Positions 8,527 to 47,168 of a stretch of 64,000 nucleotides of DNA are shown here, piece by piece. How positions within the stretch are numbered: the first letter of the stretch is position 1; every line of letters starts with the position of its first letter. The stretch comes from Rhodosorus marinus CCMP1338 (taxonomy: Eukaryota; Plantae; Rhodophyta): NCBI GenBank assembly GCA_029953675.1, contig JAMWBK010000003.1:1116001-1180000 (forward strand), written 5' to 3'. The notes below the pieces were generated by a model that saw only the letters and a program-made list of their open reading frames with translations, did no database searches and was not told the origin of the DNA. The translations under genes were made by a program, and so were the position numbers.

Positions 8527-9567
8527 ATGGCAGTGACATCTGCTCTCCTCGGCCTTGATTCGATTCGAGCGGATTTGAAGGAGCTCGGCTATCATCACAG
8601 CGCGGCTGTCGAGGAGGAAGACATAATTACTGCTACAGAGAGGCGACTTGAAGTCATTAAATGGCTGCTGGACAGGTTCGTAGAGAGCAGGAATCATGCC
8701 CACCTGATCGACGCTGACGACGATCTGGAAACCTCTGATTTGCAGGTTCTCTGAAGGGAGTGGTGAAGATTTCAGCATCGCCCACGGCGTGAATGGTCTT
8801 AGCAAAGCCTTGATAAGGTTAGGAATTAGTCTTGATCAAAATTCCGCACAGGAAATGCTGAAGCCGTCCGTGAGCCACCCAACGAGTAAGTCTGCCGGAC
8901 TGCTGAGGAACTTAATTGACGTAGCTATGTCCGTCATCATACCCGTTGATCTCAACTCTGTGCTTCATTTGTCGAGCCTCATCATCAAAAGCTCTGAGGA
9001 CTCTCCCAAAACGCATCATATTGCGAAAACTGATGTTGCCAAGGAGATGGAAAATACGCTGGACGGTGTTCTTGAGAGACGGCGGGAACTGGAAGAAAAG
9101 GTGGCCAGCATCGTCTTGGTTGAAAACAGCCGTAAAGAATCCAATTTAGAGGTAAGTCGCTCTGAGTGTTAGCTGAGCAGGCAGAGGTCGAAGCTCAAGC
9201 CGTCAGGGGTTTTACGTTTTCGCATTTCCAGGTCGCAAATATTGACGAGATTGGAGCATCGGTTGCTGAAGCACAGAAAGACTGTCAGAGCTTTCGAGAG
9301 GTCGTCGAGAGGGTGCTGGAAATCGATCGCCGATGGATGTGCCCTCGTGAAGAAGCAGGCTGGAGAGAACGAATATCCGAATGCACTGCTGCCGAGGAGA
9401 GTGTTCACAAGTTTAGCACCGACGTAATCAGCATTGTATCGAGCAAAGACCAGATCGCTGACTTGTCGCGATCGATTACAAGTTATCGGCTTGAGCTGAA
9501 TCCAGTGGTTACTGAGAGTCTTTCAGAGCTCTCGGCCGCCAACGCTGTGTTGGAGAGCATTAATTAG
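8527..9567 (+). CDS. HAUS7/AUG7-like (augmin subunit 7) coiled-coil protein, 3 exons
   Basis: With introns 8676-8775 and 9152-9231 the protein reads LKELGY...ERRLEVIKWLL...LSKALIRLGIS...LLRNLIDVAMS, followed by coiled-coil-like sequence. This resembles the HAUS7/AUG7 N-terminal pattern as recalled; no search was run. Confidence 0.55.
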
Positions 9568-10731
9568 AACCAATTTGGCGTTGCATAAGGAAAAGACGCC
9601 ACAGCGAGGAATGGTTTATTTTGAAAGGGTACTGTTTTATCTACCTCACACACACCTCAACTATCAAGATGACAAGTCAGTGCTTCCCAGGTAGGCCAAT
9701 GCGTGATCAGATCTGCAAGCCGCGCAAGTACCCGGTCCAGAAAGGTTCGAAGGTTTCTGCAAGCCCGCGCAAGTTGCTTAGTACACCCAAAACAAGAGCA
9801 TTCGTACAATTTCGTACAAACAACATTATGCCCCTACCCTTCTACATTTAGCCTTAGATTGTAATTCATAATAAATATTCCATCTAGTCCTTATAAATTT
9901 CATCCAATGCCTCCCTTAACCCGCTCAACCTCTGTAGTTATTTTAGAATTTTAGGTATCCCGCCGGTGACGTTATACGTGGGGCCTAGTTGGAAGCGCAA
10001 AACATTGAGCATAAACGATCAAAAATAAGCTAAACTCTATTTTTGCAATCACTCCCCCCCCCTACACATCCGACCATCTCATCTCACGCCGACATCGACC
10101 AGGAAGACATTAAACTAATTTCTCATCAAGGGGTTATGGTCCGGTCTAATAATTAATCTTGAATCAACAATAAACAAAACAAAAACAAAATAGTTCTTAC
10201 TTCGCGAAGTACGAGAAAACGAAAACACCTCGGACCAAAAAAAACCTTCCCCCGAACAACCCCACCCTCTAGTTATTACTAAAACCCTATCCTCCGGAAA
10301 AACTAAAAACGGTTCAAGGCATCCTTAGATATCTATAGGGGAAGTAAAAACTATTCCAGTATTCCAATATATGCTATTTATTATTTTTAAAATATTAGAA
10401 ACGGAATTTCCAAGACGTTTGCATAGGGTGGGGAGATGGATTTGTATGCCTTCATTGGGTTGGGGTTTTCAGGGGGGGTTTGGGACGATGCTCTTGTGGC
10501 TTTTTCTTTTGAGATTGTGGATGGGATTGTGCTCGAGATGGAAAGTGTGAGTTGGTGGTTGGGGAGCCGGAGGAGTGAGGGGGAGGGCAGGAGGAGTGGA
10601 ATATTGAAGGAATTGGAGAGGAGAGCGTAGGAGCGAGAGTTTGGTGGCTTGGGTAGTCGAGGATTGGATTGAAGAGGAGTATTTTTTTTTGTTTTTGGGG
10701 GGGGGGGGCGGGGTTAGGTTGTGGATTAGCC

Positions 10732-11639
10732 ATGGCGTTTGTGAGTGGATGTGGAGGTCTTGGGGTGCCTGGTGGGAGGGCTGCGGTATGTTCTCGGGAG
10801 ACGAGCTTTGGAGGACAGGCAGTGGTTGCTGTTCCGGTTGGTCAGAGGGCTCAGATGCCCGTGGCGCCTGTGTTGCCGACGATGCCGACTATTGAGGCAA
10901 TGGTGAGTTCTCCCGGCTTTTTTTTTTTTGGCTTTGGTCTGTTGTGTGCTGTGTGAGGGCTTTTTGAGTGAGAAACTTTGGTTGTTTTGGTCAAAGTTGT
11001 GCGGGATGAGAACAATGGCTCTTGCCGGAAAGCGCATTCAGCTTGGTTGCGGGTTCGGAAGGCCCCGCTCAGCGCGTCGTGTGAGCGCAGGGGTTGAATC
11101 CAAGCTTGATTCCTTGTCCTGAGCGTCGTATGGGTGCAAGAGTGGATCTTTTTTTTGGTGCCCCTGCTGGTATTCTGTTGGCTAACAATGTTTCCCTTTT
11201 TGTTTGTGTGTGTATGCAGCGTCACAGAAAGAGGGGACGCAAGCTGAACAAGCCTGCCGACCAGCGCAAGGCTTTGCTGAGAGCTCTTACGACGGAGCTG
11301 ATCCGACACGGGCGTATTTCGTCAACTCTCGCTAGGTGCAAGGAAGTCCGTCGATGTGCTGACCACATGATTCAGCTTTCCAAGGATGGATCTTTGCATG
11401 CTAGAAGACAAGCTATGGGGTTAGTTGCTCTTCGTCCGGACTATTACGTCGTTTTACATTTTAACTCACCGGAACACGTTTCTTGTTATAGATTCATTTA
11501 CGATAAGCAGCTTGTGCACGCTCTGTTCGAGCAGGGAGCGGAGAGGTACAGGGAAAGGCAAGGTGGATACACACGTGTACTCCGCACCATGCCTCGAAAG
11601 GGAGATAATGCGGAGATGGGTATTATCGAGCTGGTTTAG
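10732..11639 (+). CDS. rpl17: Plastid 50S ribosomal protein L17 with N-terminal transit peptide, 3 exons
   Basis: Exon 1 is MAFVSGCGG...(transit peptide-like). After intron 10903-11219 the sequence reads M|[33 protein letters not shown]...[12 protein letters not shown]...[14 protein letters not shown], the bL17 signature. Confidence 0.95.
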
Positions 11640-12384
11640 GGCCCACGTAAGTTGTGCGTCATAATTGCGAGAGCGTGCAAATTAAAAAGAAACCCACTGT
11701 TCACAAGTTATTCCTGGTCGAATCTTCCGGATTCCCTCGCGCGGGGTTAAGAATTTTCTTGCCTGCCTAAAAAGCTACCCTAAACTCCGGAGAGCAAGAA
11801 GAAATCGCTCCCCTCTCGCATCCCAGACTTTCGCCGGAACGATACGAAGTCTTTTCCGCTCATCCGATGTGTCCAGGCTCAAATCCAAGGTCTGGAAATC
11901 GGCCAACTCATCCCAATGTAGGTAACCCCTCAGCCCGTATTCCCGAACCCTCCAGAAGACCCTTCCAAGAAGGGACCGGTCTCGCCCAAACAGTAACCCT
12001 AGACCAACGTAACCCCCTCACCAAACAGCTTGCAGAAAACTGTGAACATCCAGCCCTCCTTTTCATTCACATGTGAACTCCTGAGCAGGGCATGCACTCC
12101 ATCGTTGTCAGCAATCCGAATGGTTCTTGCCTCGTGTAACTCTGTATCGCTACTCTGGCGACCCTTGGTGTTATCGGCCTTCAGCTCAGGTGTGAGAGGG
12201 ACGTGGCTGGAGGATGGGTTTCATGTTCTGGCTCAAGGCCTACTGATTTTGCTGGAGGATGAGCTTTGGAGAGTCTTTAGACTGGGATGGACATGGGAGG
12301 AGGATTTGAACCCCTTTTTTGCGCTTTTGTTCTAGTGCGCTGTGCGGTTGGGCGGGCGTTTTAAATATCTAGTGTGGAAAAACG

Positions 12385-15300
12385 ATGGGGAAACGTGGGA
12401 AAGCTGAGAAGTCTCTCCTCGCTTCGGAGGCACTAGCACTGCACAGAACGCTTCTGGCTCAAAAACCTCCTCTGCTGAGCGTGTATCGGATGCTGATTCA
12501 AGCCCAGCAGGGCTTGAACGAGATCCCAAAGAGTAGGCTTAGTAATGCCGACCAAGCTGGAGCAAATGATCTAGCCGCTGCTGTTATGGAATGTGCGCTT
12601 AGGCTGACTGGAGAACCGGGTCCAATCAGAAGGAGCACTCTCACACTACTGCGGCAGCTTTTGAAGATCATCACGTCAGATTCGCTGTTGAACATGATGG
12701 ACGTGGTATTGCACCCTCTCCAAAACCCCTTCTGAAGCACGACGCGGATTTCCTAAGCCCTTGCCTGCTTTTTGGTTTCCATTCTGGATAAGATCCAAGG
12801 CCTACTTACACAGAAACATGATGAAGACGAGGAGCGGGTTAGCCCAGCCGCAACTGCCGTGGTGACTAGCGTTCTCGTATCAACTGGACTCCTCGACCCT
12901 CAGATCGTTTCGAAAGCCTTGTCCAATGTTCTACAGCGGATGAAGAAGACCTCACTCAACGAGTTTTCAGTCACTGCCGCCGAGATCCTGGCAGCGATGG
13001 ATTCTACTGACTCAAAGACTCTAGACAAGGTGAGAAGGTAGTCTCCTGGAATGTCTCAGCTAATATAATACTGAGGATGGACCAAGTCCTCACTCTCGAT
13101 TTCACCGCAAGCTCACAATGCCAACACGTGTTTCCGAGCTCAGATACAAGAGCAAATATCCACAAACAAGGACGTTCCTGGAGAGGGTGGGCCGTTCTTA
13201 GCGTTGCTGTTTGCCACTGCAAATTCGACAAAGTCAGCGATGCAGAGCCTGAGCAAGATCGCATGTAAAGGGACATTTTCAACACGATCGAACTGTAAGA
13301 AGCTCTGGGCAATTACTGCGGCGGTCTGCTTTTGTAACATTGCCGCTCGTAAGGCAGTGGCTGAGGCCAGCGCTTCTGCAACGAGAAAAGGTGAAGATGG
13401 GGATTTTTATGAGGATAAGACCGCGGCAGAGGAGTCCGAGGAGGAGGCGCTTAGACTTGCTCTTCAGCTCGCTTGGAAAGCGGACGTTGGCGATGAAATC
13501 ACTCTCCTCTCTGCGGTACTGCAGAATGCGGTTGCAGAGTCGCCACACCTCGACGTGCAGAAAGCTATCCTTGTTGCACTGGAAGGACAGGATTCATCAA
13601 AGCGCGATCCATCCGACTTGACGAGAAGCATCATTGAGGCGTTTCTGGAGAATCAAACAGTTCACAAACTCATGGATGTCCCCGCGTTCTTGCTGGGAAT
13701 TTTAGCTGATGAAGCTTCGAGCTATGTAAGCACAGCCCTATCATAGTCGTTCCTATGCGTTGGACTTCCACGTGAGGAACTTGTGCTGATCAGGAGGAGA
13801 CTTGCGGCTTGCTGGGTGAATCTCAGATCGGGGAACAGGGCCAAGGAATTGCCGCCAGACTGATAACGTTCGTTGCAGATCGAGTCGACGTAGGAATCTG
13901 CCTGGGAGGATCCAGGCTGAGAGGAGTACTCGAACTAGTAGACAGCATTCGGTATAGTGAGGACGATTTTGCTAGAGACTCGTGCGCGACACTATGCGCA
14001 GCGATTGCGAACCACGTTCCACACCTCCGAGAAACGGTACTGTCCCGCCGAGCGATCGTAGCCCGCGATCCATCACGAATTGGATCGTTTTCTCACGAGT
14101 GTATCGTGTTCTCCGTTTGCTTCAGCTGCTTGCTCAAAGTCTGGAAGGGCTTCGAGTTGCAGATCTTTCTCTTTCCACCGCGGCACCTCCAACATCGATG
14201 GACGAGCTTCCTCTGGAGTTTGTACATGTACTCGGGCACGCGGCAATCTTGGCAGGTCTGGTGGAGAAGGACAGCGTCCGGGCTGGGGTAATTTACGTTG
14301 CAAAAGCCTCGGTAGTTGGAAGCGTCGAGTACTTATCAGCTCCACGTTTGCCGTACAGGTTCCATCGGCGTTGCTGCACCGATGCTGCGAAGACGCTTTG
14401 GCCTTCTTGAAGGTCCATTCTGCAGCTCTCAAGGGGAACGCCTCTAGGTTAGTTGCGCTTGCACGACGAAGGGTTGGATGGGGGCTCCTCGCTGCCTTTG
14501 CCAGGGCAAAATTGCTGAAGAGTAACCACCTCAAGAACTTGCCCACACTCCTAAAGCATGAGCTGGCCATTGAGATGCCGAGCCCAAAGGACTCTAAGAA
14601 TTACTACGAACTGGTTCTTCATGCATCATCGAGAGCAGCGGTAGGCACATACCCCACAGCAGAAACCGAACATTCAGCGTCCACTAATAGTCAGCGTGTG
14701 GCTCATCGCCTTTCTAGGCCTTGGCCGCAATAGCGGAGTGCCTCGAGGCAGGACTCTTGATTCTCGGTGTGGATAACATACTGGGCGCCGCTGCCCGAAG
14801 ACTGGCTTTCCATGCTGATGCTCGACATTCAGCATCAAGCGATAGTCAGCGCTCTCTGAGCGATAAAGTGTACAGAACAGAGGCTCCTAGACTATTTCAC
14901 TGCGTTCGACTGGCCCCACCATCGGGTTCGTTTGGCGACATCTTATACTATTTGGCGTTGGTTCAGCTCAGCTTGTCCAACCGGCGCTCGGCTGCCGACA
15001 TCACTCCTGAGTGTCCGATTAGTTCCCTTTTCAGCTTGGAGGTACAAAGCACTTCAAGTTTGACAGGTGACTTTTGAGTTGAGTGTACGTGAGACTGAAT
15101 GAGTCAGCTCCTTTTTCTGATGCACGCTGATCTCTAACCCCCAGGGTACCTACCATTGTTCCGACGCGTTGCTTTTCGGGTTTGTGACCAGTGCATTACC
15201 TGCTTTATTGTCAGTCAAAACCTCGAGAGAGATTCTGCTAGTCGCTGTGACGGACTTGAGCGACATCTCTCCGTCTATCTGTACATCTTTGGCGCTTCAG

Positions 15301-36472: not shown

Positions 36473-39400
36473 TCAGGCGACGTCCAGTTGAGTACGAATG
36501 TTCATTGCCGCGAGTTCGTTTGCAAGGTACTTGAAGACGTATGGCAGGTTGACCCGCTTCAGCTGGTCATTGGAGTGTCCGCAGCTCTTGCAAGTGACTG
36601 TACGCTCCGAGTTCGGTCCTCGAGTTTGGAGTTTGCTAAGGGGACTGAGCACAGAGCGACAATTCGCGCATACCCATATCGAATGAAGATCTGATGAGGT
36701 TGAAAGTCTGGTCAATCATTAAGCGGGGACAAATGAATGACAGAGTGAGCATCATAAGGGACTGGCCGCTGCTTCTGATTCAAATACAATACCTGTCATG
36801 AAGCAAATAGGCTGCTCCATATCCTAGAAGCGCATCCCTCTCCATCTCCCCAAATCGAATTGCCCCACCTACCTTACGACCACGTATGGGTTGTCTAGTC
36901 AACGGATTGATTGGGCCGGTTGACCGAACCTGTCGTTTGCCACAACACTCGTTAGCCTAATCCAGTCCCAAAGGGCCATATCCATTGGTGCGGCATACCT
37001 GAAACTTGTCGCTAACCATATGGCGTAACCGCTGGTATTGAACAACCCCGGTAAAAATCTCTACGTTGAAGGGTTCGCCTGTTTGCAAAAGATTTTTGAC
37101 CACATAATCAGCTCTACGGCTCTCCACGGCTCGCTGACCGTAGCGAACTAGGCGTAGTTGCTTACCTGTATAGCCCGAGTAAAGGGTTTCATTTCCATAG
37201 AATGAAAATCCCTGTTGCAGAAGCTGCTCTCCGAAGTAGTCGAAAGCACGCCGCTTGTCATCGAATCGAAAGGGTGTGGAGTCCTGAAACCTTCCATGGA
37301 GAGCGCCTGCCTTTCCGCACATGCTCTCGACCATCATCCCGATCGTCATACGTGAGGGAAATCCATTCGGGTTGAAGAGGATATCTGGAATAATTCCAGA
37401 TTCCGAGAACGGCATATCGCTCTCAGGCCTAAACATTGGCAGCAGTCCTGACTAGTGAGCGACACCGGATTCCCCTGTACGCGGTATTCAAGTCGGGGAA
37501 AATATTGTATTACCAGTGCGAGGATAACGTTCCCTTCTGGCCAGCTCGTGAAGCAAATTTGTCTCCAATAACTGGGTCTCGGCGGTACCGCAAGCGAATG
37601 ACTGCTCGCCTGCATCCACGATTCTCGCTACCCGCACTGGGTGCGAGTAGTCGTACCTTTGTGTCAAATGATGTCGAGAACCTAGTGAGCGAGAATAAGG
37701 TCTCTCAAGCTGCAAAGGAGTTTTAAGTACCTGATCAACCGTCGCCGTCTCCATTGCTTTATGGTGAAAGACTTTGGTTCTCCTCATCATTTTTTCTGTA
37801 AATTTGGGCGAGCTCTCCTTGAGCGTGGGATAATGGCACAGCCAGAGCTCCTTTGAAACTCCTTACCTCCATCGTCAATATCGTCCGTTATCGCGTACAG
37901 AGGATCTCCTTGCTTAAGGACCGCTCCGACATGCGGGAGTCCATCACGTCCTAGAAAGTCGTTCTCTTCGGGGCATCCAAACTGCTTCTCCTTGCCAGCT
38001 GCAGTCGCGTTCAAGAACCGATAACGAAAAAGGTTGTCAGAGATGAATCCCTCCAGTGAGAACAATATCTAATCTCAGTTCGCACCTGCGGTTTCATCTA
38101 GATCTACTATCGTCGTTGTATAGATGAAAGCCTGGCAAAAACCTCGTTCCAAGCTGGCCTTGTTTATGACCATAGCATCTTCCATGTCGTATCCAGTGTA
38201 GCTCAAAACTGCAACGACCGCGTTGATACCGTTCGGAAATACGTCAACTCCCAGTGGGTCCTGGGACACTTTGTTTCTCGCTATAGGAGTCTGCCCGGTG
38301 AGCAGCCTGTATGTCTTGGAGTCAGATCGTCTTTCGAACATGTGACAGGGCGTTCCGAGCGCCTGCTTTCCCATTTGGCACTGGTACATATTTCGTGGAC
38401 TTTGATTCATGTCCGAGAACGGCGTGAAGGACGCCAATACGCTGAGAATTCCCGTCGCGGATATTTCTTCGTGGGAAAAGCCCTCTTCCTGCTCCTCTTC
38501 CATCCCATCGTCATCTCTGACAGCGCTTCGTATCCTCAGGTGAATCTTTCATAAGATGGTGAACCAATTTTTAGCATTTGTGAATGAGGCGTCGGTCCGC
38601 TGCGCAATCCAATTCAGTCTGAAGAGAGGTGTTTCGGTGCTTACCTGCTCAAAGGGCCCCACACTCTCCTCTACTGCTGCAGATCCAGCCCGGAGCCATT
38701 TCACGCGTCGCAACAGGCGCGCTGGGGAGCTGAAGAGGAAGACACCTGCGTACGGACCACCCCTTCTCCGTGGGATGTGAGATACCTCTGTATAGCTTGG
38801 CAAAGTTGAGAAATTGTCATCAACCTTGCAGCTTCGCAATCTCCGAGTCAGAATTGAGGCGGATTCTCCATCCTCAACAAAACCGATCACGCGGCCGTCC
38901 GCGACTATGGGTATTGTAGACTTCATGACCGTATTCACAGCATACCCGATCTTCGTGGGCGGTAGAGCTCCTAAGGAACCCACAAGAGCTTCGACCTTTG
39001 AAGCATCTGCAGGGGAATCCAGTGATACGGTTGCTGCAGCAGTCAAGTGGTTGAGAAGTCCTGGAAAAGCACCAGAGTTGGAAATCGATTCTTCAGTTGC
39101 TAGTTTGCTTTGATGATGCATGCGTCGTTCTTCGTGCAACTCGTGAGCGCATACCACACGGGGCCCCGTCCGGAGTGTGAACGGGGCAGATAAATCCCCA
39201 CGCATCTGGAAGCAGCTTCCGAACTGATGTGGTCTTAACATCATTAAAAAACTGGCCTCGGTGAATGCATCGAAAGTGCGCCAGAAATCTCCAAAAGTTG
39301 ATCCTCTCCGCGACAACCGCGTAGCCGGAGGCCTGAAGCAGGTCGAGGCCAGTCTGGGTCTGCAAGTTTCCAGTAGCTAGAAAGTACTCCATTTTCCGCG

Positions 39401-40888
39401 TAATATCACGTCGACCTCTGGATATCAAACTTGTCAGGTACTTTGGTGTATGAAATTCTGCAATTACACGAGCTCGGGACTTCGGACCTCTGACGTCCTT
39501 CTCGAATAGTGCAGATATGCTCTTCAGGTACTCCTCCAGTTTCTCCCTGAGGTAGATCAGGTAGAGATGGCCAGGAAGCAGCACCTCTTGGTTCATGAGA
39601 GCATCGGGGTTGTCCTCCATGACCTCTCCACGCACGAGGGCCAGAAGCTTTTTTATCATCAGAACCAGCATATCCACCTTCGCAGCATCGAGTGTCGATG
39701 ATTCATCCTCATCGTGGTACGTACTCAGATGCACCAAGACGTACTGCCGTAACAGCTGCTTACCGGCTTCAGCGTTGTTGAGATGGGGTGGGCTCTGTAG
39801 CGGGGCTCGGAAGCGGGAACCTAGGAGAGTCAAGATTTGATGCCGATTTCCGCGGTGAAGGTCCGCCGCGTCCTTAATCATGGCAATAGCTCGTTCACGA
39901 ACGTACTGATCTTCCGCATTGTGCCCAACTATTCTGTCGAAAACATCGCTGTCCGTCGCTTCCCGGTGGAGCAGCGCTCTGATTACAGTCACAACAGGAA
40001 TGAAATACTCTTCTCGCCGAATCGTTATCCTCAGCATGACGCCGCCGGATGTTAAATAATGCAAATGGTTTGTTTTGGAAGACTGATCAGGTCTGCAGCA
40101 TCTCATAGACACTGCAGCATCGGAGTAGAGAACCCCGCGATTTCTATTGTTCGACCTGTGCAGCCCGATGACATGATGTCTTCTATTTACAATCACCATA
40201 CGAACGACCTTGGAGACGGAGAGCCGGTATGCTCACTCTCAGTAAGATCGCATAGTTCTGGGTGAGACTTGCAACTACAATCCATACCTTTTCCACGCCG
40301 TTGATAACAAAATACCCTCCGAGCTCGTATTCTTCTTCATTCTTTCGTACCAACTCTGCGGGTGTCAAACCTTCGAGATTACATTTGGAGCTTCTAACCA
40401 TGACCGGAATATCGCCCAACCTGCGAGTCAGTCTCTCCAGGATTTCGTCATTATCCGTTCGTCGAAAGACTAGTGTCCCGAACAGACCTCCCTTGTAACA
40501 GTCAGCACGGGATGAAGAGCACATTTAGAATATGAAGTAGCGCAGTGACTGCTCCAAATCTTTGCAACACTACCTTGTACGTTGCGTGCTGCTCTCGAGC
40601 ATGTCTGGGAAGCACCTTTGCAGTTCCTTCTGAACTTCCGGAAGCGGTTCTATGTCCTTGATCGGGTTTCAACACGTTCATATCTTCCAGGCTTATACTT
40701 ACAGCTGCAAGAGACGATTCATCCGGGGGCTGAAGAATAACGGGTTCAATCTCCCTTCTCATCAACCTCAGCCCTTGCCCCATGGCATAGTCGAAAGAAC
40801 CCACATGAGGCTGGATCAAATTCCTCAGCAGATCCAACCTCTCACTCTCTGCTCCGCTTAACGTGGAAGGCTGAACTTCGGAAACCAT
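36473..40888 (-). CDS. RPA2: DNA-directed RNA polymerase I second-largest subunit, multi-exon
   Basis: [28 protein letters not shown]...[33 protein letters not shown]|[68 protein letters not shown] and [16 protein letters not shown]. The Pol I-specific variants are present. Confidence 0.96.
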
Positions 40889-41628
40889 TCTGCGCGTAAT
40901 TGTCTCCCTTAACAACCTCCTTGACGGTCTTCCGTCCCCAACTCCAGCACTCCGTCCCGCCGCGTCGGAGCTGCGCCAGCGCTCCTCCGATACGGATGAA
41001 ATAGTTAACTCAGAACGCAGGAACGGCAACGCTGAACCGTATCAGAATGGAGTGTGCCTAAGTTTTGGAGAATCTGAGCGAGCAAGAGCAAAGGAGTCGT
41101 GCAATAGTCAAGGTCTAGAACGATACCAATTTTACTATCCCAGTTGAGAGGGGCTGACCTCGTTCATCGCTAGAGTGGTTATCCGTTGAGGGACACTTGG
41201 ACTAGCCCTCGGACTGATTAATTCCGAATTTTCGTTTTTCAGCAGTACAGATGTACCGCCATCCAACGAACTGTTCATTCGGTAGTCGACCAACTTAGAG
41301 ACGTAACGGCATACCATTCCAACATCCTTGCCTGGTAAGACAGATGGGACTGACCACGGCGGTGATACGCGTTTTATTTTAACAAATACATGTATTAAAA
41401 AGGGATGGGACAAGTAAAGTGGGCAAGAAGTGGGACAGTTGCCGATAGAGAGCAACTCTCCCGCAACCGGACTGTCATTTGGGAGGGCTGCTCATTTTTT
41501 AGAAGAGTGCTCCTCGAGTGTCATGAAGTCCAGGGGGATGCGTTTAGCGTATTGGATTTTCGTTTTTAAGTAACGCTGGTTAGTAGTGAGTATTGGCATG
41601 TGCCTCGTGCGCCATCGGGTGACCCAGA

Positions 41629-43830
41629 ATGGTTGGATTTGTCTTCCTAGGAAACCTGATCGGGCTTCAACCTAGTCTGGCTTTGGCTATCGAACGAGGT
41701 GTAGTCGAACGCAAAGGGACTTATCAGAAAATTGATAAACGAACTCTTGAAGTCGAGCCGGTGGTGGATAAGACGCCAGTAGAGTGGCGACCAGTTGTTG
41801 ACGACACAGTGAGAGTCTACCAAAACGCAGAAAGTCGGCTCGGGTTGAAGCTTTTGGCGGTTCTTATCAGAGGATCGGTAGCCAAAGGTGTATCCAGCGG
41901 TTTGAGCGGGCCCTCTGATCTCGACTCTCTGGCCTACTTCGAAACAACGAAGCCTAAGAATTCAGAGGTTCTATTTCGAAACTGGATGTGTCAAGAGGGA
42001 CAGACCCTCGTCAACGCGATCGTACTCAAGTACGGGCTTGCGTCCAAGATTGGTAAGCCACCAGAGCGTACACTGGAAAAAAGCTTCTTCTATCCTGTGC
42101 TTAGTGCCAGTGTTTGTTTCGTCAATGCCCTGCCCGACAGAGATCTGTCCGTATTTTGTAATTGATCGGACTCAGATTCCAAACAAATTCACTGCCGCAA
42201 CCCAGAGCGTCGTCGCCTACGGACTTTGGGATGCTGATAAGAGCGCAAGGGTTCCAGAAGTCAAACTAGCGATCGACATTCGCGCTGACCTGAATCGATC
42301 TCTAGCTGATGGACCATCCAAGGAATCCACTCAGTGGTTTCTGAAGAAGGCACTCCGTGCTGGGATGGAATTGAGCTTCAGAGAAGTTCTCTATTTTTCT
42401 CGGGACTTGCTCCCCTGCTATGAGGCCTGTGCGAAGCTATCTCCGGAGATGGAACCCCTTTTTCTCGAAGCCCTGCAAATAGCCTGTGGAGCAGAGTCTG
42501 ATATCTCGGTCACCCTGTCAGTAATGCGCGAGATGGCTATGTGGGTAGAGACCCAGCACATGGATGTGCTGGCTCGGGACAGCGCGTCGGAACCCAAACA
42601 CCTTAGTGAAATATTGGTGGATCACAAGGATGAGCCTGACTCCAACTCGCCTGCAGATTTACGGAGCGCTTTTTGTTTGTTCTTTCGGGACCTCATTCCG
42701 AGCACAAACGAAGTTGATGAATCGTCGCTGCTGACAGACCAGTTGCCGCTTGTGGCTATTAGACCGATTCATCAAGTACGAGAGGCCAGCCTCCAAGAGG
42801 ACTGGCGAAAGAGCTTCGCGACAGAAAGTGAAGCTGTTGTGTATAGAGGTGTGTGAAACTGGAAAGAGTCAAAAGGTCTGGTAGACTTCTTTTCAGTGTA
42901 TAGAAGAGCTGAAGTTGTGCCTCGCCAAAACCTGCTTCTGCGGCAGGTGGTGCAAAGTCATGGCCCGCCATTCGTAAGTGGACTCTGGGATACCTGGCTA
43001 GGCTTCTCGGAGATCAAATCGAGGTTTTGGTATCCCCTTCAAACGTGTTCGTATATTGCCGAGAGTCCCACCCATGGATAACCTCGGGTGCGCATTTCGA
43101 TAGAACCAAAGGAATCGCTCGATACGAGCCTGAATTATTCTGGCTGAAAGTGATTCACTACTGCAGGCACTTTTACTCCGACTAGTCGACGGACTTTCTT
43201 GGCTCCCGATGAGGTCCTAGAGCGGATGCGAGGGGAAGCAACAAAAAGGCCGCTTTTTTTTCACCCAGGAGAGGAAAGACTTTACGTCCAGTCCAGAATT
43301 CCACCAGCTCTTCTCGATAAAGACGCCGAGCGATTGCAGAATGTCATCGGTGCGTTTTGAGAACTAATTTTGCCCGTTTTCAACAGTTCAGCTGGATGAC
43401 CTTCCCGTTGCGCTATATTTTCCCGGCCGGTCCAGGGTTCGGGGCTCAAGCTGAGAGAGTTTGGATGTCCACCGCCGGAAGTGTTTCCGCACTGCACTAC
43501 GATGACGCAGACTCCTTCCTTGTACAGATTAGAGGGACGAAGAGGGTTATTTTTGTCAAGCCGGATGACCTCGATAAGCTTGCGTGCTTCCCAGTGGGAC
43601 ACCCACTGGGAAGACGAAGTAGAATCGATATCACAGAGGGCGACACTTTCGGAGGAAACTCTTCAGCGAGGCATGCGTCATTCTGGCGGGAAGCGGATAG
43701 TCGATGTCTTTCCGTCTTGCTTCATCCCGGAGATATTTTATTCTTTCCAGCGCGATGGGCACATTACATTGAAAGCGTAACAGCGTCAGTTTCTCTCACA
43801 TACCGTGTCCTGCGCGGGCACGGGAGATGA
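41629..43830 (+). CDS. Putative fusion of a Pol-beta-superfamily nucleotidyltransferase and a JmjC/cupin 2OG-Fe(II) oxygenase
   Basis: N-part LIRGSVAKG...SDLDSL...SKI|EIC and WFLKKALRA...SRDLLPCY; C-part ERLYVQSRIP...VWMS..GSVSALHYDDADSFLVQIRGTKR...PGDILFFPARWAHYIES. The parts are linked by GT-AG sites with no promoter-like gap. Each domain is well supported; the fusion is inferred. Confidence 0.65.
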
Positions 43831-43963
43831 CATACTAGCAGGGAGTAGTCAGCACTTGCTGGGTCAAGAAGTTCGCAACTTTTTTGCATTGTTGTCAGAA
43901 AAACTCTTAGTATTTGATTGTTCCCATCGACGTCTGCCGCGAATGGCCGACTGCTTCAAAGCG

Positions 43964-45441
43964 TTAACGCTGTTTTGCGAGCTTTGAATTCTCTGCTGCC
44001 AGGGCTTTCGCTCGAACGAGCAGCTTGTGTTTTGCTCGTCGCACTATGCGCTTAGTTCTTATGTGGTCCAATTTCGACCTGTACTTCTGCAAGTCCTCCT
44101 CTTTCAAAAGATGGTAGAAGATCTTCATTGTATAAAATGCATCGTTTCCTGCGTTGTGCAGGTTGTTATATTCAATGTCCATTGCAGAGAGTAAATTTTC
44201 GACACTTGTGCTCTCCCTCATCTGCAGCAACTGCCGGCTTAGTCCCTGCAGACACGAGAAAGCGAACACGCCCGACCGGTCAGCATCATTCCACCAACAG
44301 AGAGGTACTAGTACAATAGATCCTACTTCGGTATCGAGAACTTTGCTCAAGTCGTCGAAAGTGAAGCCGCTGTTCTTAAGAAAGTCCACGTCACTCTTGA
44401 AATTATGTCCAAGGACAAACCCTGCCCTGGACACTAGATCCGACAGCTGGCTGAAAATGGTGGCCTGGCCCGCAATCTCCGACATGCCAAAGTTGAAGTG
44501 GTCTCTACGATCAGGGACATACCTTCCAAGGAAAACGAAAAAAAAGGCGCTGAGCTCTTTGATGGGGTTGCCCCGAGCAAGCCTTGTCATCCACGTTGAT
44601 ATTGAAGTCTCACCTTCCATTTCTGCGAAACGCGTTTTCTCGGACAACGAAATGCTTGCAGCTCAATATATTGAGCTCGGGCACTGCCAAATCCCCCTTC
44701 AGCTCAAACAGCACCGCTCCGATTTCCAGCATTTTGGATTGATCTCGTTCCCAGGCCTCGACATCTATGGAGAGCAGCTTCGAGCCCTGGGCACGCCAGC
44801 GTTTGCATACATAATTAGTACAACGAGCGGGGGGACGATAAAGCCAAAAACAAGGAGTATGACCCCCGGCCAAACACGGTCCTCACCCCTTCAAGCTTGC
44901 TTCTGAGATTCGCCATTAACGCGGTTTGTCGTTTTGTCGCCTCCTCTGCCCTTTCCTGAGATTTCAGTTTATCTCTAACCTTCTTGTTGTGCTTGCTCAC
45001 ATCCCGGAGAAGCTGCGTAATATCCTTCACATCCTCGTACTCCGCTCTAGTAAGCTCATGCCAGTCTTCCTCCGCCGCCGACTGAATCGTGGCTACCTCA
45101 CCAGCAGCAAAGGCCTCTGCTGTTTCCTTCATGGAGGCAAAAGCAGTGCTATTGACAAATAGGTCCTTAAATACCAAGCCATTGAGGGTGACGGGTTCCG
45201 GACGAGAGCCAATGAATAGTTCGGCTCCGCAACATCTTAGAACTGCCTCTTTCAGCGCAATGTCGAAGGACTCTCGTTTCTCTTTTGGTTGACCTCTCCC
45301 CCATGTCCTATGGACATGGGGGAGAGGGAAGTGCCCTTCCTCCATCCTCCGTAGGAATGGAAACTTGGCTAAAACAGTTTGTCTCAACCCGTAGAACCTG
45401 CTGGCAATTGCCGAATCAACAATCGACGGACTAAAAGACAT
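43964..45441 (-). CDS. DEDDh 3'-5' exonuclease, Gfd2/YDR514C/QIP-like (start approximate)
   Basis: ExoI SIDVEAWERDQSKMLEIG, HFVVREN..RNGR|YVPDRRDHFNFG, ExoII GHNFKSDVDFL and ExoIII LHNAGNDAFYT. Confidence 0.8.
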
Positions 45442-46331
45442 CCCCGCAAAAAGCTACTAGATGCCCAGCAACCATCATCGATGCACCTTTCAAGTCATCA
45501 TTCCCTCATCGTCAGCATTCCTTCCACAGCGTCGAGTTTCAAACCCACAAAAATCCCGGGCGCATATACTCTCAACGTCCTGAAGCCACACAACGTCATC
45601 TATCAAGGCCAAATGATGTAGGACTTAAACAGACATTACCAGTTACATTCGTGGTAGAGGCTCACGACATCAGGGGAATGAAGCAAGTAAACCATAAGCT
45701 TATCAAGAGGTTCCGTAAAAAAGAAAGCAGAGCTGATCTAGGTTCGGTTGGGAGATATTGGACAACAAGGGTTCTTTCAGTTTCCGTCTCACTAGGGTTT
45801 TAAGTCTTTACCACATGTTGTATTCTCGCCGGGGGCTCCGATTTCACTCGACTTAGGTAGGTGGTCAGAACTCAAGAGTGAGTTGGATTTTTGCTTGTTG
45901 GTAGAGTTCTTGGTGAGCTATGTAAGTCGTTGGTTCTATTTCGGTTTGCGCCTGGCAGTCTTGTCCCTTGTGGGGTTTTTGCCCCTCCCCCTCTTTTGCG
46001 GGATTTTTCTCTGATCTTTTTGGCAACTTGGGTTTTGCTTGGCGTTCGGTGTTCGTAAATTTGCTCTTATTCTGCAGTTTGGCACAATAGTGGTTCCTTG
46101 TTGCGTTGCCCCACAATCCCCAGTTGTTTGCTTTGGTGGTACAATGCTGCAGTGTTTCTTGAAGCCCGAGCATCGCAGGTTACTGGCTACCGGTACTCTC
46201 CACACTTGATAGCTACCAGCCCCACGATGGGCTCGTAGGGAATGTAGGAAAACTTGCTCGAGTGTAGATTGGTTCCCTGACTAGACCTTCTTAATGTAGC
46301 TCAGACTAGACCTCAGACTAGACCTTCTTAA

Positions 46332-46454
46332 TAGGGTTGTGCCAAGTGGGTCGGGTTTTTCTCTGTTTACCCCTCTAAACCCCCCTGTTTTCACGGGTTT
46401 AACCAGGTCTGGGTCATGAAGAGCGAAGAACACGACCCACTTGGCACAACCCTA
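46332..46454. mobile_element. 123-bp MITE, hAT-like termini
   Basis: 22-bp perfect TIR TAGGGTTGTGCCAAGTGGGTCG (30 bp with 2 mismatches), flanked on both sides by TTCTTAA. No coding capacity. Confidence 0.85.
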
Positions 46455-47168
46455 TTCTTAATGCAAACATCGATTTAAGAAAACAAAATCGATATGTTAA
46501 ACATCGATTTAATCGTTTTCAAAACTCAATTAATTTGGCTCTTCTTTCAATTTTTCACGAATACAAAATCTTCGTCGTATCCAATCAATTAACCAATTAA
46601 CATCATTCAATACCAATCAAATCTTAAAATATTAATCTTTCGAAATATTTTATGACAATCATCCTATTTATTCATTTTTTCACTACGAACCATTCTCGAA
46701 CCTGACTAGCCCAAAACTCTTTTCCGCGCTAGGCAGCAAAATGAAATTCTTGTTCGGGACTTTTACCCCCTTCCTAAAGAATCGTTTTTGCCATGAATGC
46801 TGGCTATATTCATAAACAAATATTTCTTGATAGCCAAATATCTCATCGGAATAAACAGAGAAAAACCTACCCCTTCCGTGTTTTATAGATATTGTAGAAG
46901 TGGTTGTACACGTACGAAGTACAAAGGGTGGCAATAATTTACGTAATCACGATATATTGGGTTTCTGAGTGTACTAAATAGTTTGTGCCTAGAGTCGAGC
47001 TTTTTGGGGCGACTGTCTCCTTGGGCTTGACAGTAGTCTAGATTACTTTCTCTATTCGATCATAGCGTGGCTATTAGAGAGGTGCTGGAGCGAAGGATTA
47101 GGGAAGCTGCTGGAGGTGTTAGGGTGGATTAGGAGTTGATACGATTTGGATAAATAAAATTGAACAAG

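What the first reader, a model, noticed from the sequence alone, without database searches (positions are those of the whole stretch)
41629..43830. Nucleotidyltransferase-JmjC hydroxylase fusion, possibly plastid-targeted
Seen: a GS...DxD Pol-beta NTase motif (RGSVAKG...SDLD) with a helical C-lobe, then a JmjC domain with an intact HxD...H iron triad (HYD...WAH). They are on the same strand, with only ~500 bp of exon-like and GT-AG sequence between them (including ERLYVQSRIPPALL) and no AT-rich promoter block. The N-terminus begins MVGFV, reminiscent of the Phe-containing red-algal transit peptide start. Established: minimal NTases adenylate RNA, proteins or small molecules, and JmjC/cupin-8 enzymes hydroxylate proteins or tRNA (e.g. 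TYW5, FIH). Inference: a two-step modifying enzyme (hydroxylate, then nucleotidylate the new OH, or a coupled RNA modification) for which I know no characterised example.
Basis: partly seen in the sequence, partly recalled or inferred. Interest (0 to 1): 0.75.

Follow-up and report, generated by a model that had tools for sequence, protein, structure and literature searches.

The report
Adenylyltransferase–hydroxylase fusion enzyme in algae
A red-alga nuclear gene really does encode one protein joining an antibiotic-adenylyltransferase-like enzyme to an oxygen-dependent protein hydroxylase of the FIH type; the same uncharacterised fusion recurs in several algal lineages, so it probably carries out a coupled modification that nobody has yet described.

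Summary
Window 41629-43830 (+) is a five-exon gene of Rhodosorus marinus whose translation is identical to NCBI hypothetical protein NDN08_003108 (616 aa). Transcript contigs from related Rhodosorus strains cross the junction of the two halves with introns 1-3 spliced out, so the fusion is one mRNA.

Residues about 17-294 form a two-domain nucleotidyltransferase. Pfam misses it in this protein. It has 215 HMMER relatives, conserved G-S...D-x-D...E residues, and an AlphaFold model whose best PDB matches are AadA, AAD(9), ANT(4') and LinB. Residues about 343-616 form an FIH-like JmjC/Cupin_8 hydroxylase with intact iron and 2-oxoglutarate residues.

The "500 bp spacer" is exons 3-4 of the JmjC domain. 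At least 18 sequence clusters share the architecture. The named ones are red algae, green algae and a haptophyte. In 17 mostly cyanobacterial loci the free-standing transferase sits next to a different JmjC gene. Both halves are under purifying selection.

Plastid targeting is not supported for this protein: only 16 residues precede the conserved fold. The hydroxylate-then-adenylylate mechanism remains an inference. I found no paper on this fusion. I rate it a new variant of known enzyme kinds, of moderate to high interest.

The parts
41629..42052 (+). Exon 1. It holds the start codon, a 16-residue uncharged N-terminus (MVGFVFLGNLIGLQPS), and the NTase alpha/beta core with R81-G82-S83...G87 (41869-41889) and S96-D97-L-D99 (41914-41925).
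   Evidence: The ATG is preceded by an in-frame stop two codons upstream, both in the window and in transcript L001. The motifs are invariant in alignments A3 and A4.
42053..42140 (+). Intron 1 (88 nt, GTAAGC...ACAG). It splits the codon of E142, the putative third catalytic carboxylate.
   Evidence: It is spliced out in transcript contig L001. The spliced model is identical to P0001.
42141..42848 (+). Exon 2. It holds the rest of the NTase core (E142), the helical bundle lobe (W207, K210, R214, R229-D230, C234), an acidic disordered linker (residues about 295-342, 42599-42742), and the first strands of the JmjC domain (LPLVAIRP...VVYRG).
   Evidence: The Cupin_8 match starts in this exon.
42849..42946 (+). 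Intron 2 (98 nt, GTGTGT...GCAG).
   Evidence: It is spliced out in both L001 and L002.
42947..43087 (+). Exon 3, N-terminal part of the JmjC domain (GAKSWPAIRKWTLGYL...VFVYCRESHPWITSG).
   Evidence: It aligns to FIH residues about 60-110 and is conserved in the fused homologs.
43088..43166 (+). Intron 3 (79 nt, GTGCGC...GCAG).
   Evidence: It is spliced out in L001 and L002.
43167..43349 (+). Exon 4, part of the JmjC domain. It includes ERLYVQ (43274-43291); Y464 aligns with FIH Tyr145, a 2-oxoglutarate ligand.
   Evidence: FIH alignment. Y464 and Q466 are invariant in the fused family.
43350..43435 (+). Intron 4 (86 nt, GTGCGT...CCAG). L001 retains it and L002 splices it. Its 3' part (43387-43435) is in frame with exon 5.
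   Evidence: Homologs lack the peptide it would encode.
43436..43830 (+). Exon 5, the double-stranded beta-helix core. It carries H506-x-D508 (43492-43503), K521 (within 43534-43545), the H541-P-L-G-R545-R546 motif (43600-43617), H595 (within 43756-43776), and the stop codon at 43828-43830.
   Evidence: Pfam Cupin_8 and JmjC_2, the FIH alignment, invariant columns, and Foldseek FIH at E=2e-20.

Best explanation
The gene encodes a conserved bifunctional algal enzyme.

Module 1 (residues about 17-294) is an AadA/ANT-type nucleotidyltransferase, made of a Pol-beta-like core plus a helical bundle. Enzymes with this fold use Mg-NTP, usually ATP, to put a nucleotidyl group on a hydroxyl of a bound substrate.

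Module 2 (residues about 343-616) is an FIH-like Fe(II)/2-oxoglutarate JmjC oxygenase. Enzymes of this type hydroxylate a C-H bond, typically the beta-carbon of a protein side chain.

An acidic, disordered linker of about 50 residues joins the two modules.

The most likely mode of action is that both modules work on one shared substrate. The most economical coupling is that the oxygenase makes the hydroxyl group and the transferase then nucleotidylates it.

Shown: the gene structure, the single mRNA, both folds, both sets of catalytic residues, conservation of the fusion, and purifying selection.

Inferred: catalytic activity, the identity of the substrate (protein side chain or small molecule), the nucleotide used, and the order of the two steps.
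For: Gene and mRNA:
- The spliced translation is identical to NDN08_003108 of Rhodosorus marinus.
- Transcript contigs L001 and L002, from strains about 86-90% identical in DNA, cover 41503-43467 and beyond with introns spliced.

NTase half:
- 215 HMMER relatives were found. They are mostly bacterial proteins of about 265 aa, half of which reach Pfam NTP_transf_2.
- R81, G82, D97, D99, G169 and R214 are invariant in the 92-sequence alignment; S83, G87, S96, E142, R229 and D230 are nearly invariant. K210 is invariant in the 30-sequence alignment.
- A profile of the family hits solved NTases by sequence.
- The AlphaFold model has pLDDT 82. Its top Foldseek matches are AAD(9), AadA, ANT(3'')(9), ANT(4') and LinB, all at probability 1.0.

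JmjC half:
- Cupin_8 scores 81.9 bits and FIH gives E=4e-19. The equivalents of Y145, H199, D201, K214 and H279 are present.
- Foldseek matches FIH at E=2e-20.

Fusion conserved:
- About 18 clusters at 50% identity carry both halves. They include Klebsormidium nitens, Pterosperma, Gracilaria domingensis and a Chrysochromulina cluster.
- Catalytic residues of both halves are conserved in these proteins.

Selection and packing:
- dN/dS is 0.23 for the NTase and 0.29 for the JmjC part.
- The full-length model has pTM 0.81, which suggests the two modules pack in a defined way.

Independent link between the two enzyme kinds:
- In 17 loci, mostly cyanobacterial, the free-standing NTase lies tail-to-tail with a JmjC_2 oxygenase gene.
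Against: - No activity, substrate or product is known for any member of this family.
- This protein itself does not reach any Pfam NTase model; the assignment rests on transitive homology and a predicted fold.
- The TM-scores to the ANT structures are only 0.4-0.5.
- The cyanobacterial JmjC neighbour belongs to a different JmjC subfamily (ROX/YcfD-like). It is convergently oriented, so it is not co-transcribed with the NTase. Many other bacterial homologs have no JmjC gene nearby.
- Fusion alone does not prove sequential chemistry.
- I could not inspect the inter-domain geometry (PAE, distance between active sites) of the model.
- The transcript evidence comes from related strains, not from the sequenced one.
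Confidence: 0.6

Rival explanations
1. The two catalytic modules are both active and target the same macromolecule, for example a translation-apparatus or repeat protein, but at different sites. One site is AMPylated on an existing Ser/Thr/Tyr and another is hydroxylated. There is no hydroxylate-then-nucleotidylate sequence.
For: Some NTases of this superfamily AMPylate proteins. MNT antitoxins appear among the fold and sequence hits, and DrrA among the sequence hits; 4 of 30 bacterial relatives touch Pfam SidM_N. The relatives of the JmjC half (FIH, JMJD5, JMJD7, TYW5) and the ROX-like cyanobacterial neighbour mostly act on the translation machinery or on repeat proteins (established knowledge of those families).
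Against: The best full-length fold matches are small-molecule O-adenylyltransferases, not protein AMPylators. No candidate target is known.
Confidence: 0.2
2. The enzyme tailors a small molecule or peptide natural product, or detoxifies one, rather than modifying a protein.
For: The closest folds all act on antibiotics. One bacterial homolog (P0200) sits inside an NRPS cluster that also carries TauD-type 2OG hydroxylase domains. The same NTase family is also found fused to GNAT and APH-type phosphotransferase domains, which are typical of small-molecule modification.
Against: The JmjC half is closest to protein hydroxylases, with 24-26% identity to FIH in the structural alignments. Most bacterial homologs lie in unrelated housekeeping contexts. 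No biosynthetic cluster surrounds the algal gene; its neighbours are RPA2 and a DEDDh exonuclease.
Confidence: 0.15
3. The NTase-like half is a non-catalytic nucleotide-binding or regulatory/scaffolding domain of an otherwise ordinary FIH-like hydroxylase. Another possibility is that it auto-AMPylates the enzyme to regulate it.
For: This protein scores below every Pfam NTase threshold. Pseudo-NTases such as MiD51 and NF45/NF90 appear far down the fold-hit list.
Against: G-S, D-x-D, the third carboxylate E142, and the K210/R214/R229-D230 set are invariant or nearly so across eukaryotic and bacterial members. dN/dS is 0.23. This pattern is expected of an active enzyme.
Confidence: 0.05

Closest known systems
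AadA / ANT(3'')(9), AAD(9), ANT(4') and LinB: two-domain antibiotic O-adenylyltransferases (PDB 5g4a, 6xz0, 7uy4, 6p01, 3jyy)
   Same: They share the Pol-beta-like core followed by a helical bundle. They share G-S...D-x-D plus a downstream Glu, which is the catalytic base E87 in AadA by established knowledge. They are a similar size, about 260 aa. They are the best Foldseek matches at probability 1.0.
   Different: Sequence identity is only 11-17%, and TM-scores are 0.4-0.5. This family has its own invariant signature (W207-x2-K210-x3-R214, R229-D230-L-x-P-C). No Pfam DUF4111/AadA-type match was found. It is fused to an oxygenase, and there is no evidence of an antibiotic substrate.
FIH (factor inhibiting HIF, HIF1AN), the asparaginyl/aspartyl/histidinyl beta-hydroxylase of HIF-alpha and ankyrin repeats
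   Same: It is the best sequence match (E=4e-19) and the best fold match (E=2e-20, 24-26% identity). The Tyr145, His199-x-Asp201, Lys214, Arg238 and His279 equivalents are present, as is the HP..R.S.(V/I)D motif.
   Different: The position of FIH Gln239, which contacts the target Asn, is Arg here and in the whole fused family (HPLxRR). FIH's insert around residues 165-185 is absent from the spliced protein. The C-terminal dimerisation helices are absent, because the protein ends just after the last beta-strand. An NTase is attached at the N-terminus.
Bacterial free-standing homologs of about 265 aa, annotated 'nucleotidyltransferase domain-containing protein' (Patescibacteria, filamentous cyanobacteria, Ideonella, Trueperaceae, Bdellovibrionales)
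   Same: They are true homologs of the N-half over its full length, with 25-31% identity and E down to 1e-16. They have the same invariant residues.
   Different: They are not fused. Their function is unknown. In cyanobacteria they are paired, as neighbours, with a ROX/YcfD-like JmjC_2 gene rather than an FIH-like one.
MNT-HEPN systems and other protein-AMPylating NTases (GlnE-like and DrrA-type domains)
   Same: They share the minimal NTase core and the G-S...D-x-D motif. They appear among the sequence-profile and fold hits.
   Different: These hits cover only the core of about 100 residues. No HEPN partner or R-x4-6-H motif was seen. The helical lobe here resembles that of the ANT enzymes.

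Membership tests
Pol-beta superfamily nucleotidyltransferase (ANT/AadA-like two-domain class) | hG[GS] x9-13 D-h-[DE]-h motif on the first strands of the core | tested here: met
   L-I-R81-G82-S83...S96-D97-L-D99-S. In the 92-sequence alignment R81, G82, D97 and D99 are invariant, and S83, G87 and S96 are nearly invariant.
Pol-beta superfamily nucleotidyltransferase (ANT/AadA-like two-domain class) | Third acidic residue on a neighbouring strand | tested here: met
   E142 (K-I-E-I-C) is nearly invariant as E or D. It lies on strand 138-148 of the model.
Pol-beta superfamily nucleotidyltransferase (ANT/AadA-like two-domain class) | Alpha/beta core followed by a helical bundle, similar to solved ANT structures | tested here: met
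   The AlphaFold model has pLDDT 82.4. The top 14 Foldseek PDB hits are AAD(9), AadA, ANT(3'')(9) and ANT(4'), with probability 1.0 and TM 0.43-0.52 normalised by target length.
Pol-beta superfamily nucleotidyltransferase (ANT/AadA-like two-domain class) | Match to a curated NTase profile (Pfam PF01909 or PF18765) above the cut-off | tested here: not met
   This protein has no NTase family hit, even at E<=10. Of its relatives, 15 of 30 bacterial and 9 of 29 long ones match PF01909 at E<=0.01, so the link is transitive.
Pol-beta superfamily nucleotidyltransferase (ANT/AadA-like two-domain class) | Nucleotidyl transfer to a substrate hydroxyl | not testable with these tools
   This needs an enzyme assay.
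FIH-like JmjC / Cupin_8 Fe(II)-2OG oxygenase | Cupin_8 or JmjC profile match above the cut-off | tested here: met
   PF13621 scores 81.9 bits against a cut-off of 27.4 and covers profile positions 7-243 of 252. PF08007 scores 38.7 bits.
FIH-like JmjC / Cupin_8 Fe(II)-2OG oxygenase | His-x-Asp...His iron triad | tested here: met
   H506, D508 and H595 align with FIH H199, D201 and H279. They are invariant in 21 fused proteins.
FIH-like JmjC / Cupin_8 Fe(II)-2OG oxygenase | 2-oxoglutarate ligands (FIH Tyr145, Thr196, Lys214) | tested here: met
   Y464 and K521 are invariant. Ser stands at the Thr196 position.
FIH-like JmjC / Cupin_8 Fe(II)-2OG oxygenase | FIH orthology: Gln239 substrate contact and C-terminal dimerisation helices | tested here: not met
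   Arg546 replaces Gln239, and the whole family has HPLxRR. The chain ends about 10 residues after the last strand. The protein is therefore FIH-like but not an FIH orthologue.
FIH-like JmjC / Cupin_8 Fe(II)-2OG oxygenase | Hydroxylase activity | not testable with these tools
   This needs a 2OG-turnover assay and product analysis.
Plastid-targeted red-algal protein (Phe-type transit peptide) | Cleavable N-terminal extension ahead of the conserved mature domain, rich in Ser/Thr/Ala and basic residues and poor in acidic ones | tested here: not met
   Only 16 residues precede the conserved domain. They contain no basic residues, no acidic residues and one Ser/Thr. Residues 15-22 are already a modelled helix of the fold.
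Plastid-targeted red-algal protein (Phe-type transit peptide) | Phe within the first few residues | tested here: met
   F4 and F6 are present. The second red-algal-like homolog, P0004, starts MLGF. On its own this is weak evidence.
Plastid-targeted red-algal protein (Phe-type transit peptide) | Predicted or observed plastid localisation | not testable with these tools
   No targeting predictor was available. Several fused homologs of unknown taxon do carry presequences of 39-53 aa with almost no acidic residues, rich in S/T/R/P, so organelle targeting in the family remains possible.

The most novel reading that the evidence does not exclude
The fusion, and the paired genes in cyanobacteria, make a modification not yet described. 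A JmjC oxygenase installs a hydroxyl on a protein side chain or a metabolite. The attached AadA-like transferase then caps that new hydroxyl with AMP or another NMP. The result would be an O-nucleotidylated hydroxy-residue used for regulation in photosynthetic organisms.
Probability: 0.2. Interest if true: 0.85.

Novelty: new variant of a known kind. Interest (0 to 1): 0.6.

Why it matters
Both halves belong to well-studied enzyme superfamilies. Their covalent combination has no characterised example that I could find, and databases label these proteins only as 'JmjC domain-containing' or 'hypothetical'.

The fusion is conserved in red algae, green algae and haptophytes. A gene-neighbour pairing in cyanobacteria echoes it. 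Together these argue for a real functional coupling between 2OG-dependent hydroxylation and nucleotidyl transfer.

If that coupling is confirmed, it would add a new two-step modification chemistry. It would also give FIH-type hydroxylases, known mainly from animal oxygen sensing, a function in algae. And it would assign a first function to a widespread family of uncharacterised bacterial nucleotidyltransferases.

Tried and rejected
1. My first model for intron 4 used donor 43343 and acceptor 43387. It kept FSWMTFPLRYIFPAGP, which aligned well with FIH's insert. I rejected it for three reasons: transcript L002 and the NCBI model splice 43350-43435, that intron is canonical and of typical length, and none of 15 fused homologs has the extra peptide.

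2. I considered an ER signal peptide because the N-terminus is hydrophobic with an A-L-A motif. I rejected it because the LALAI stretch is part of the conserved first helix of the NTase domain.

3. The weak Pfam Npa1 hit in the helical lobe (E=6e-4, below the cut-off) was dismissed as spurious.

4. Direct searches of the N-half gave nothing useful: nothing meaningful in the PDB sequence search and nothing in NCBIfam.

5. The two word-indexed protein searches with full-length queries returned only the three Rhodosorus proteins. A full taxonomic census of the fusion was therefore not obtained.

6. I tested for a cyanobacterial (endosymbiotic) origin of the N-half by comparing profile scores. Cyanobacterial homologs score no better than Patescibacteria or Ideonella, so the origin is unresolved.

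7. The first genome-contig scan, with a 30-sequence alignment, failed because it had no conserved stretch. A tighter alignment worked.

8. I asked whether the cyanobacterial JmjC neighbour is the ancestor of the algal C-half. Its HMM barely detects the algal domain (E=5e-5, 12 bits), so the two are different JmjC subfamilies.
Full report
**What is in the window.** The region is eukaryotic nuclear DNA with short GT-AG introns. I assembled the + strand reading frames between 41629 and 43830 into five exons: 41629-42052, 42141-42848, 42947-43087, 43167-43349 and 43436-43830. The result is a 616-aa protein. The only close database match is NCBI 'hypothetical protein NDN08_003108 [Rhodosorus marinus]', which UniRef names 'JmjC domain-containing protein'. 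It lies on a 3.35-Mb contig. The final spliced translation is identical to it. The window therefore comes from the red alga Rhodosorus marinus, and a fused gene model already exists in public annotation. The precomputed Pfam domains for that protein are only Cupin_8 and JmjC_2, so the nucleotidyltransferase half is unannotated.

**Is it one gene?** Two JGI transcript-type contigs come from related Rhodosorus strains that are 82-92% identical in DNA.

- L001 (1711 nt) is collinear with 41503-43467. Introns 1, 2 and 3 are removed precisely and intron 4 is retained.
- L002 (3367 nt) splices introns 2, 3 and 4. It then runs on into the convergent downstream gene.

It sits inside the JmjC domain, because the motif VVYRG|GAKSWPAIRKW is split by it. 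The Cupin_8 match already begins in exon 2. The start codon is firm. An in-frame stop lies two codons upstream, both in the window and in L001. The caveat is that the transcripts are from relatives, not from the sequenced strain.

**The C-terminal half.** Residues about 343-616 match Pfam Cupin_8 at 81.9 bits, against a cut-off of 27.4. Among solved structures the best matches are as follows.

| Structure | E-value |
|---|---|
| Human FIH | 4e-19 |
| JMJD5 | 1e-14 |
| JMJD7 | 1e-7 to 2e-6 |
| TYW5 | 4e-5 |

In the FIH alignment the key residues correspond as follows.

| FIH residue | This protein |
|---|---|
| Tyr145 | Y464 |
| Thr196 | Ser |
| His199-x-Asp201 | H506, D508 |
| Lys214 | K521 |
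| Arg238 | R545 |
| His279 | H595 |
| Gln239 | R546 |

All are present except Gln239, which contacts the target asparagine in FIH. The full-length AlphaFold model has pLDDT 83.5 and pTM 0.81. Its best PDB fold matches are FIH (E=2e-20, 24-26% identity), then JMJD5, TYW5 and JMJD7. The chain ends about ten residues after the last beta-strand, so FIH's C-terminal dimerisation helices are missing. This half is FIH-like, predicted active, and not an FIH orthologue.

**The N-terminal half.** Pfam, NCBIfam and a direct PDB sequence search found no NTase in this protein. An exhaustive HMMER search of residues 1-342 against 1.84 billion representatives found 215 proteins at E<=1e-3. Most are about 265 aa and align over residues 25-280.

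- Half of a sample of these hit Pfam NTP_transf_2.
- Sources name them 'nucleotidyltransferase domain-containing protein'. They come from Patescibacteria, filamentous cyanobacteria, Ideonella, Trueperaceae, Bdellovibrionales and others.
- In a 92-sequence alignment R81, G82, D97, D99, G169 and R214 are invariant. S83, G87, S96, E142, R229, D230 and C234 are nearly so. K210 is invariant in the 30-sequence alignment.
- This is the G-S...D-x-D...E signature of Pol-beta-type NTases, plus a family-specific helical-lobe motif.
- A profile of the family hits solved NTases by sequence: an MNT-like protein at 4e-5, with kanamycin NTase, a DrrA-type domain and AAD(9) at 0.01-0.05.
- An AlphaFold model of residues 1-342 has pLDDT 82, and above 90 for most of residues 12-290. 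It matches AAD(9), AadA, ANT(3'')(9), ANT(4') and LinB at Foldseek probability 1.0, over about 260-280 aligned columns and with both domains covered.

More precisely, it is an AadA/ANT-like two-domain O-adenylyltransferase fold. Residues 295-342 are acidic and modelled as disordered. They form a linker.

**The fusion is a family, not a one-off.** Among the HMMER hits, about 18 clusters at 50% identity carry both an N-half match and a C-half match. The named members are these:

- Klebsormidium nitens GAQ89297 (a charophyte).
- Pterosperma sp. CCMP1384 (a prasinophyte).
- Gracilaria domingensis KAI0557364 (a red alga; the gene model is truncated).
- A 47-member cluster that includes a Chrysochromulina fragment and marine metagenome proteins labelled 'HIF hydroxylase'.
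- An MMETSP transcript, P0004, that is 42% identical over the N-half.

The rest come from unnamed assemblies. All named sources are photosynthetic eukaryotes. The census is incomplete, because the word-indexed searches did not recover these proteins. In a 21-sequence full-length alignment the catalytic residues of both halves are invariant or nearly so. The family motifs Y-x-Q, L-H-x-D, G-x-K-R, H-P-L-x-R-R and W-x-H are conserved. Between the window and L001, dN/dS is 0.23 for the NTase, 0.39 for the linker and 0.29 for the covered JmjC part. Both modules are therefore maintained by selection.

**An independent link between the two enzyme kinds.** I fetched 80 bacterial genome loci that encode the free-standing NTase. 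Clustering their neighbours showed one recurrent partner.

- The partner is a protein of about 390 aa with a JmjC_2 domain (PF08007, E about 1e-28) and an intact H-x-D...H triad.
- It lies tail-to-tail with the NTase gene in 17 loci: 16 from the genome scan plus locus L003 (Limnoraphis robusta).
- In 14 of these loci the gap is -45 to +251 bp. In the other three, including L003, it is 1.9-2.6 kb.
- The loci span Lyngbya, Arthrospira, Capilliphycus, Phormidium, Pseudanabaena, Leptolyngbyaceae, Pantanalinema, Spirulinaceae and Halomicronema, plus two uncultured bacteria.

This JmjC is only remotely related to the algal C-half (E=5e-5). The genes are convergent, not co-transcribed. The evidence is therefore suggestive rather than strong. 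Still, it shows the same NTase family associated with a JmjC oxygenase a second time. Elsewhere the bacterial context varies. One homolog sits in an NRPS cluster with TauD domains. Other relatives are fused to kinase, GNAT, APH or HxlR domains.

**How it probably works.** All solved enzymes with the N-half's fold bind Mg-ATP between the two lobes and adenylylate a hydroxyl of a bound substrate. FIH-type enzymes create a hydroxyl. This is established knowledge of both families. A tethered pair, apparently packed in a defined way (pTM 0.81; inference, since the PAE was not available), most simply acts on one substrate. Hydroxylation followed by O-nucleotidylation is the most economical coupling. 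I give about 0.6 to 'bifunctional enzyme with both modules active on a common substrate'. Within that, I give about 0.2-0.3 to the strict hydroxylate-then-nucleotidylate sequence. The rivals are:

- modification of the same target at two sites;
- tailoring of a small molecule or peptide;
- a regulatory or pseudo-enzymatic NTase.

The Gln239-to-Arg change, conserved as Arg-Arg, hints that the target differs from FIH's asparagine and may be anionic. That is speculation.

**Plastid targeting.** The conserved domain begins at about L17. The motif L-x-x-A-[IV]-x-x-G-x-V...G aligns with the bacterial proteins, and residues 15-22 are a modelled helix. Only MVGFVFLGNLIGLQPS is therefore available as a presequence. 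It has no charged residue and one Ser/Thr. That is short and atypical for a transit peptide. On the other hand, P0004 also begins MLGF. Several fused homologs of unknown taxon carry presequences of 39-53 aa with almost no acidic residues, rich in S/T/R/P. All named hosts have plastids. For this protein the claim is not supported. For the family it stays open. No predictor was available.

**Novelty and verdict.** Four literature searches found no paper on an NTase-JmjC fusion. Both folds are known kinds. The combination, its conservation in algae and the cyanobacterial pairing are undescribed as far as I could check. I rate it a new variant of a known kind, with interest 0.6.

Noticed in passing
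L017, L020, L021, L022, L023, L036, L037, L049, L056, L057, L065, L067, L076, L078, L084, L088, L003 (about 8800-12600 in most loci): In 17 loci, mostly from diverse filamentous cyanobacteria, the free-standing homolog of the NTase half lies tail-to-tail with a ROX/YcfD-like JmjC_2 oxygenase gene of about 390 aa. In three loci (L003, L021, L022) the two genes are 1.9-2.6 kb apart; in L003 an ABC transporter gene lies between them.
   Followed up: yes
L009 6001-6951 (same contig as L044): A 316-aa homolog of the NTase half sits directly after a 1902-aa NRPS that carries a TauD hydroxylase domain. The contig is from an Acidobacteriota MAG. This is a second context in which the NTase family is paired with a 2OG oxygenase.
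   Followed up: partly
window 43350-43435: The 3' part of intron 4 (43387-43435) is in frame with exon 5. It would encode FSWMTFPLRYIFPAGP, which aligns with an FIH insert, yet all fused homologs lack it. One related-strain transcript retains the intron and another splices it. This may be intron retention or a remnant of former coding sequence.
   Followed up: partly
window 43831-45441 and L002 1447-3367: A convergent, intron-containing DEDDh (DnaQ-like) exonuclease gene ends 133 bp from this gene's stop codon. Transcript contig L002 joins the two genes, which implies that their 3' ends overlap.
   Followed up: partly
window 38549-41029 (-): The divergent upstream neighbour is the second-largest subunit of RNA polymerase I. 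It has Rpb2 domains 1-3 and the Rpa2-specific domain. It shares an intergenic region of about 600 bp with the fusion gene.
   Followed up: partly
window 46330-46850: A 38-nt inverted repeat (46330-46367 / 46419-46456, 89% complementary) is followed by an AT-rich block with GC about 0.31. It may be a small hairpin or MITE-like element, or a promoter/terminator region.
   Followed up: no
L002 1-700: Transcript contig L002 carries frameshifts in the N-terminal coding region, retains intron 1 and lacks the equivalent of window 42159-42322. It is either an aberrant isoform or an assembly artefact in that strain.
   Followed up: no
proteins P0038, P0055, P0092, P0141 and others: The same NTase family also occurs fused to protein kinase, GNAT acetyltransferase, APH phosphotransferase and HxlR domains in other uncharacterised proteins.
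   Followed up: no
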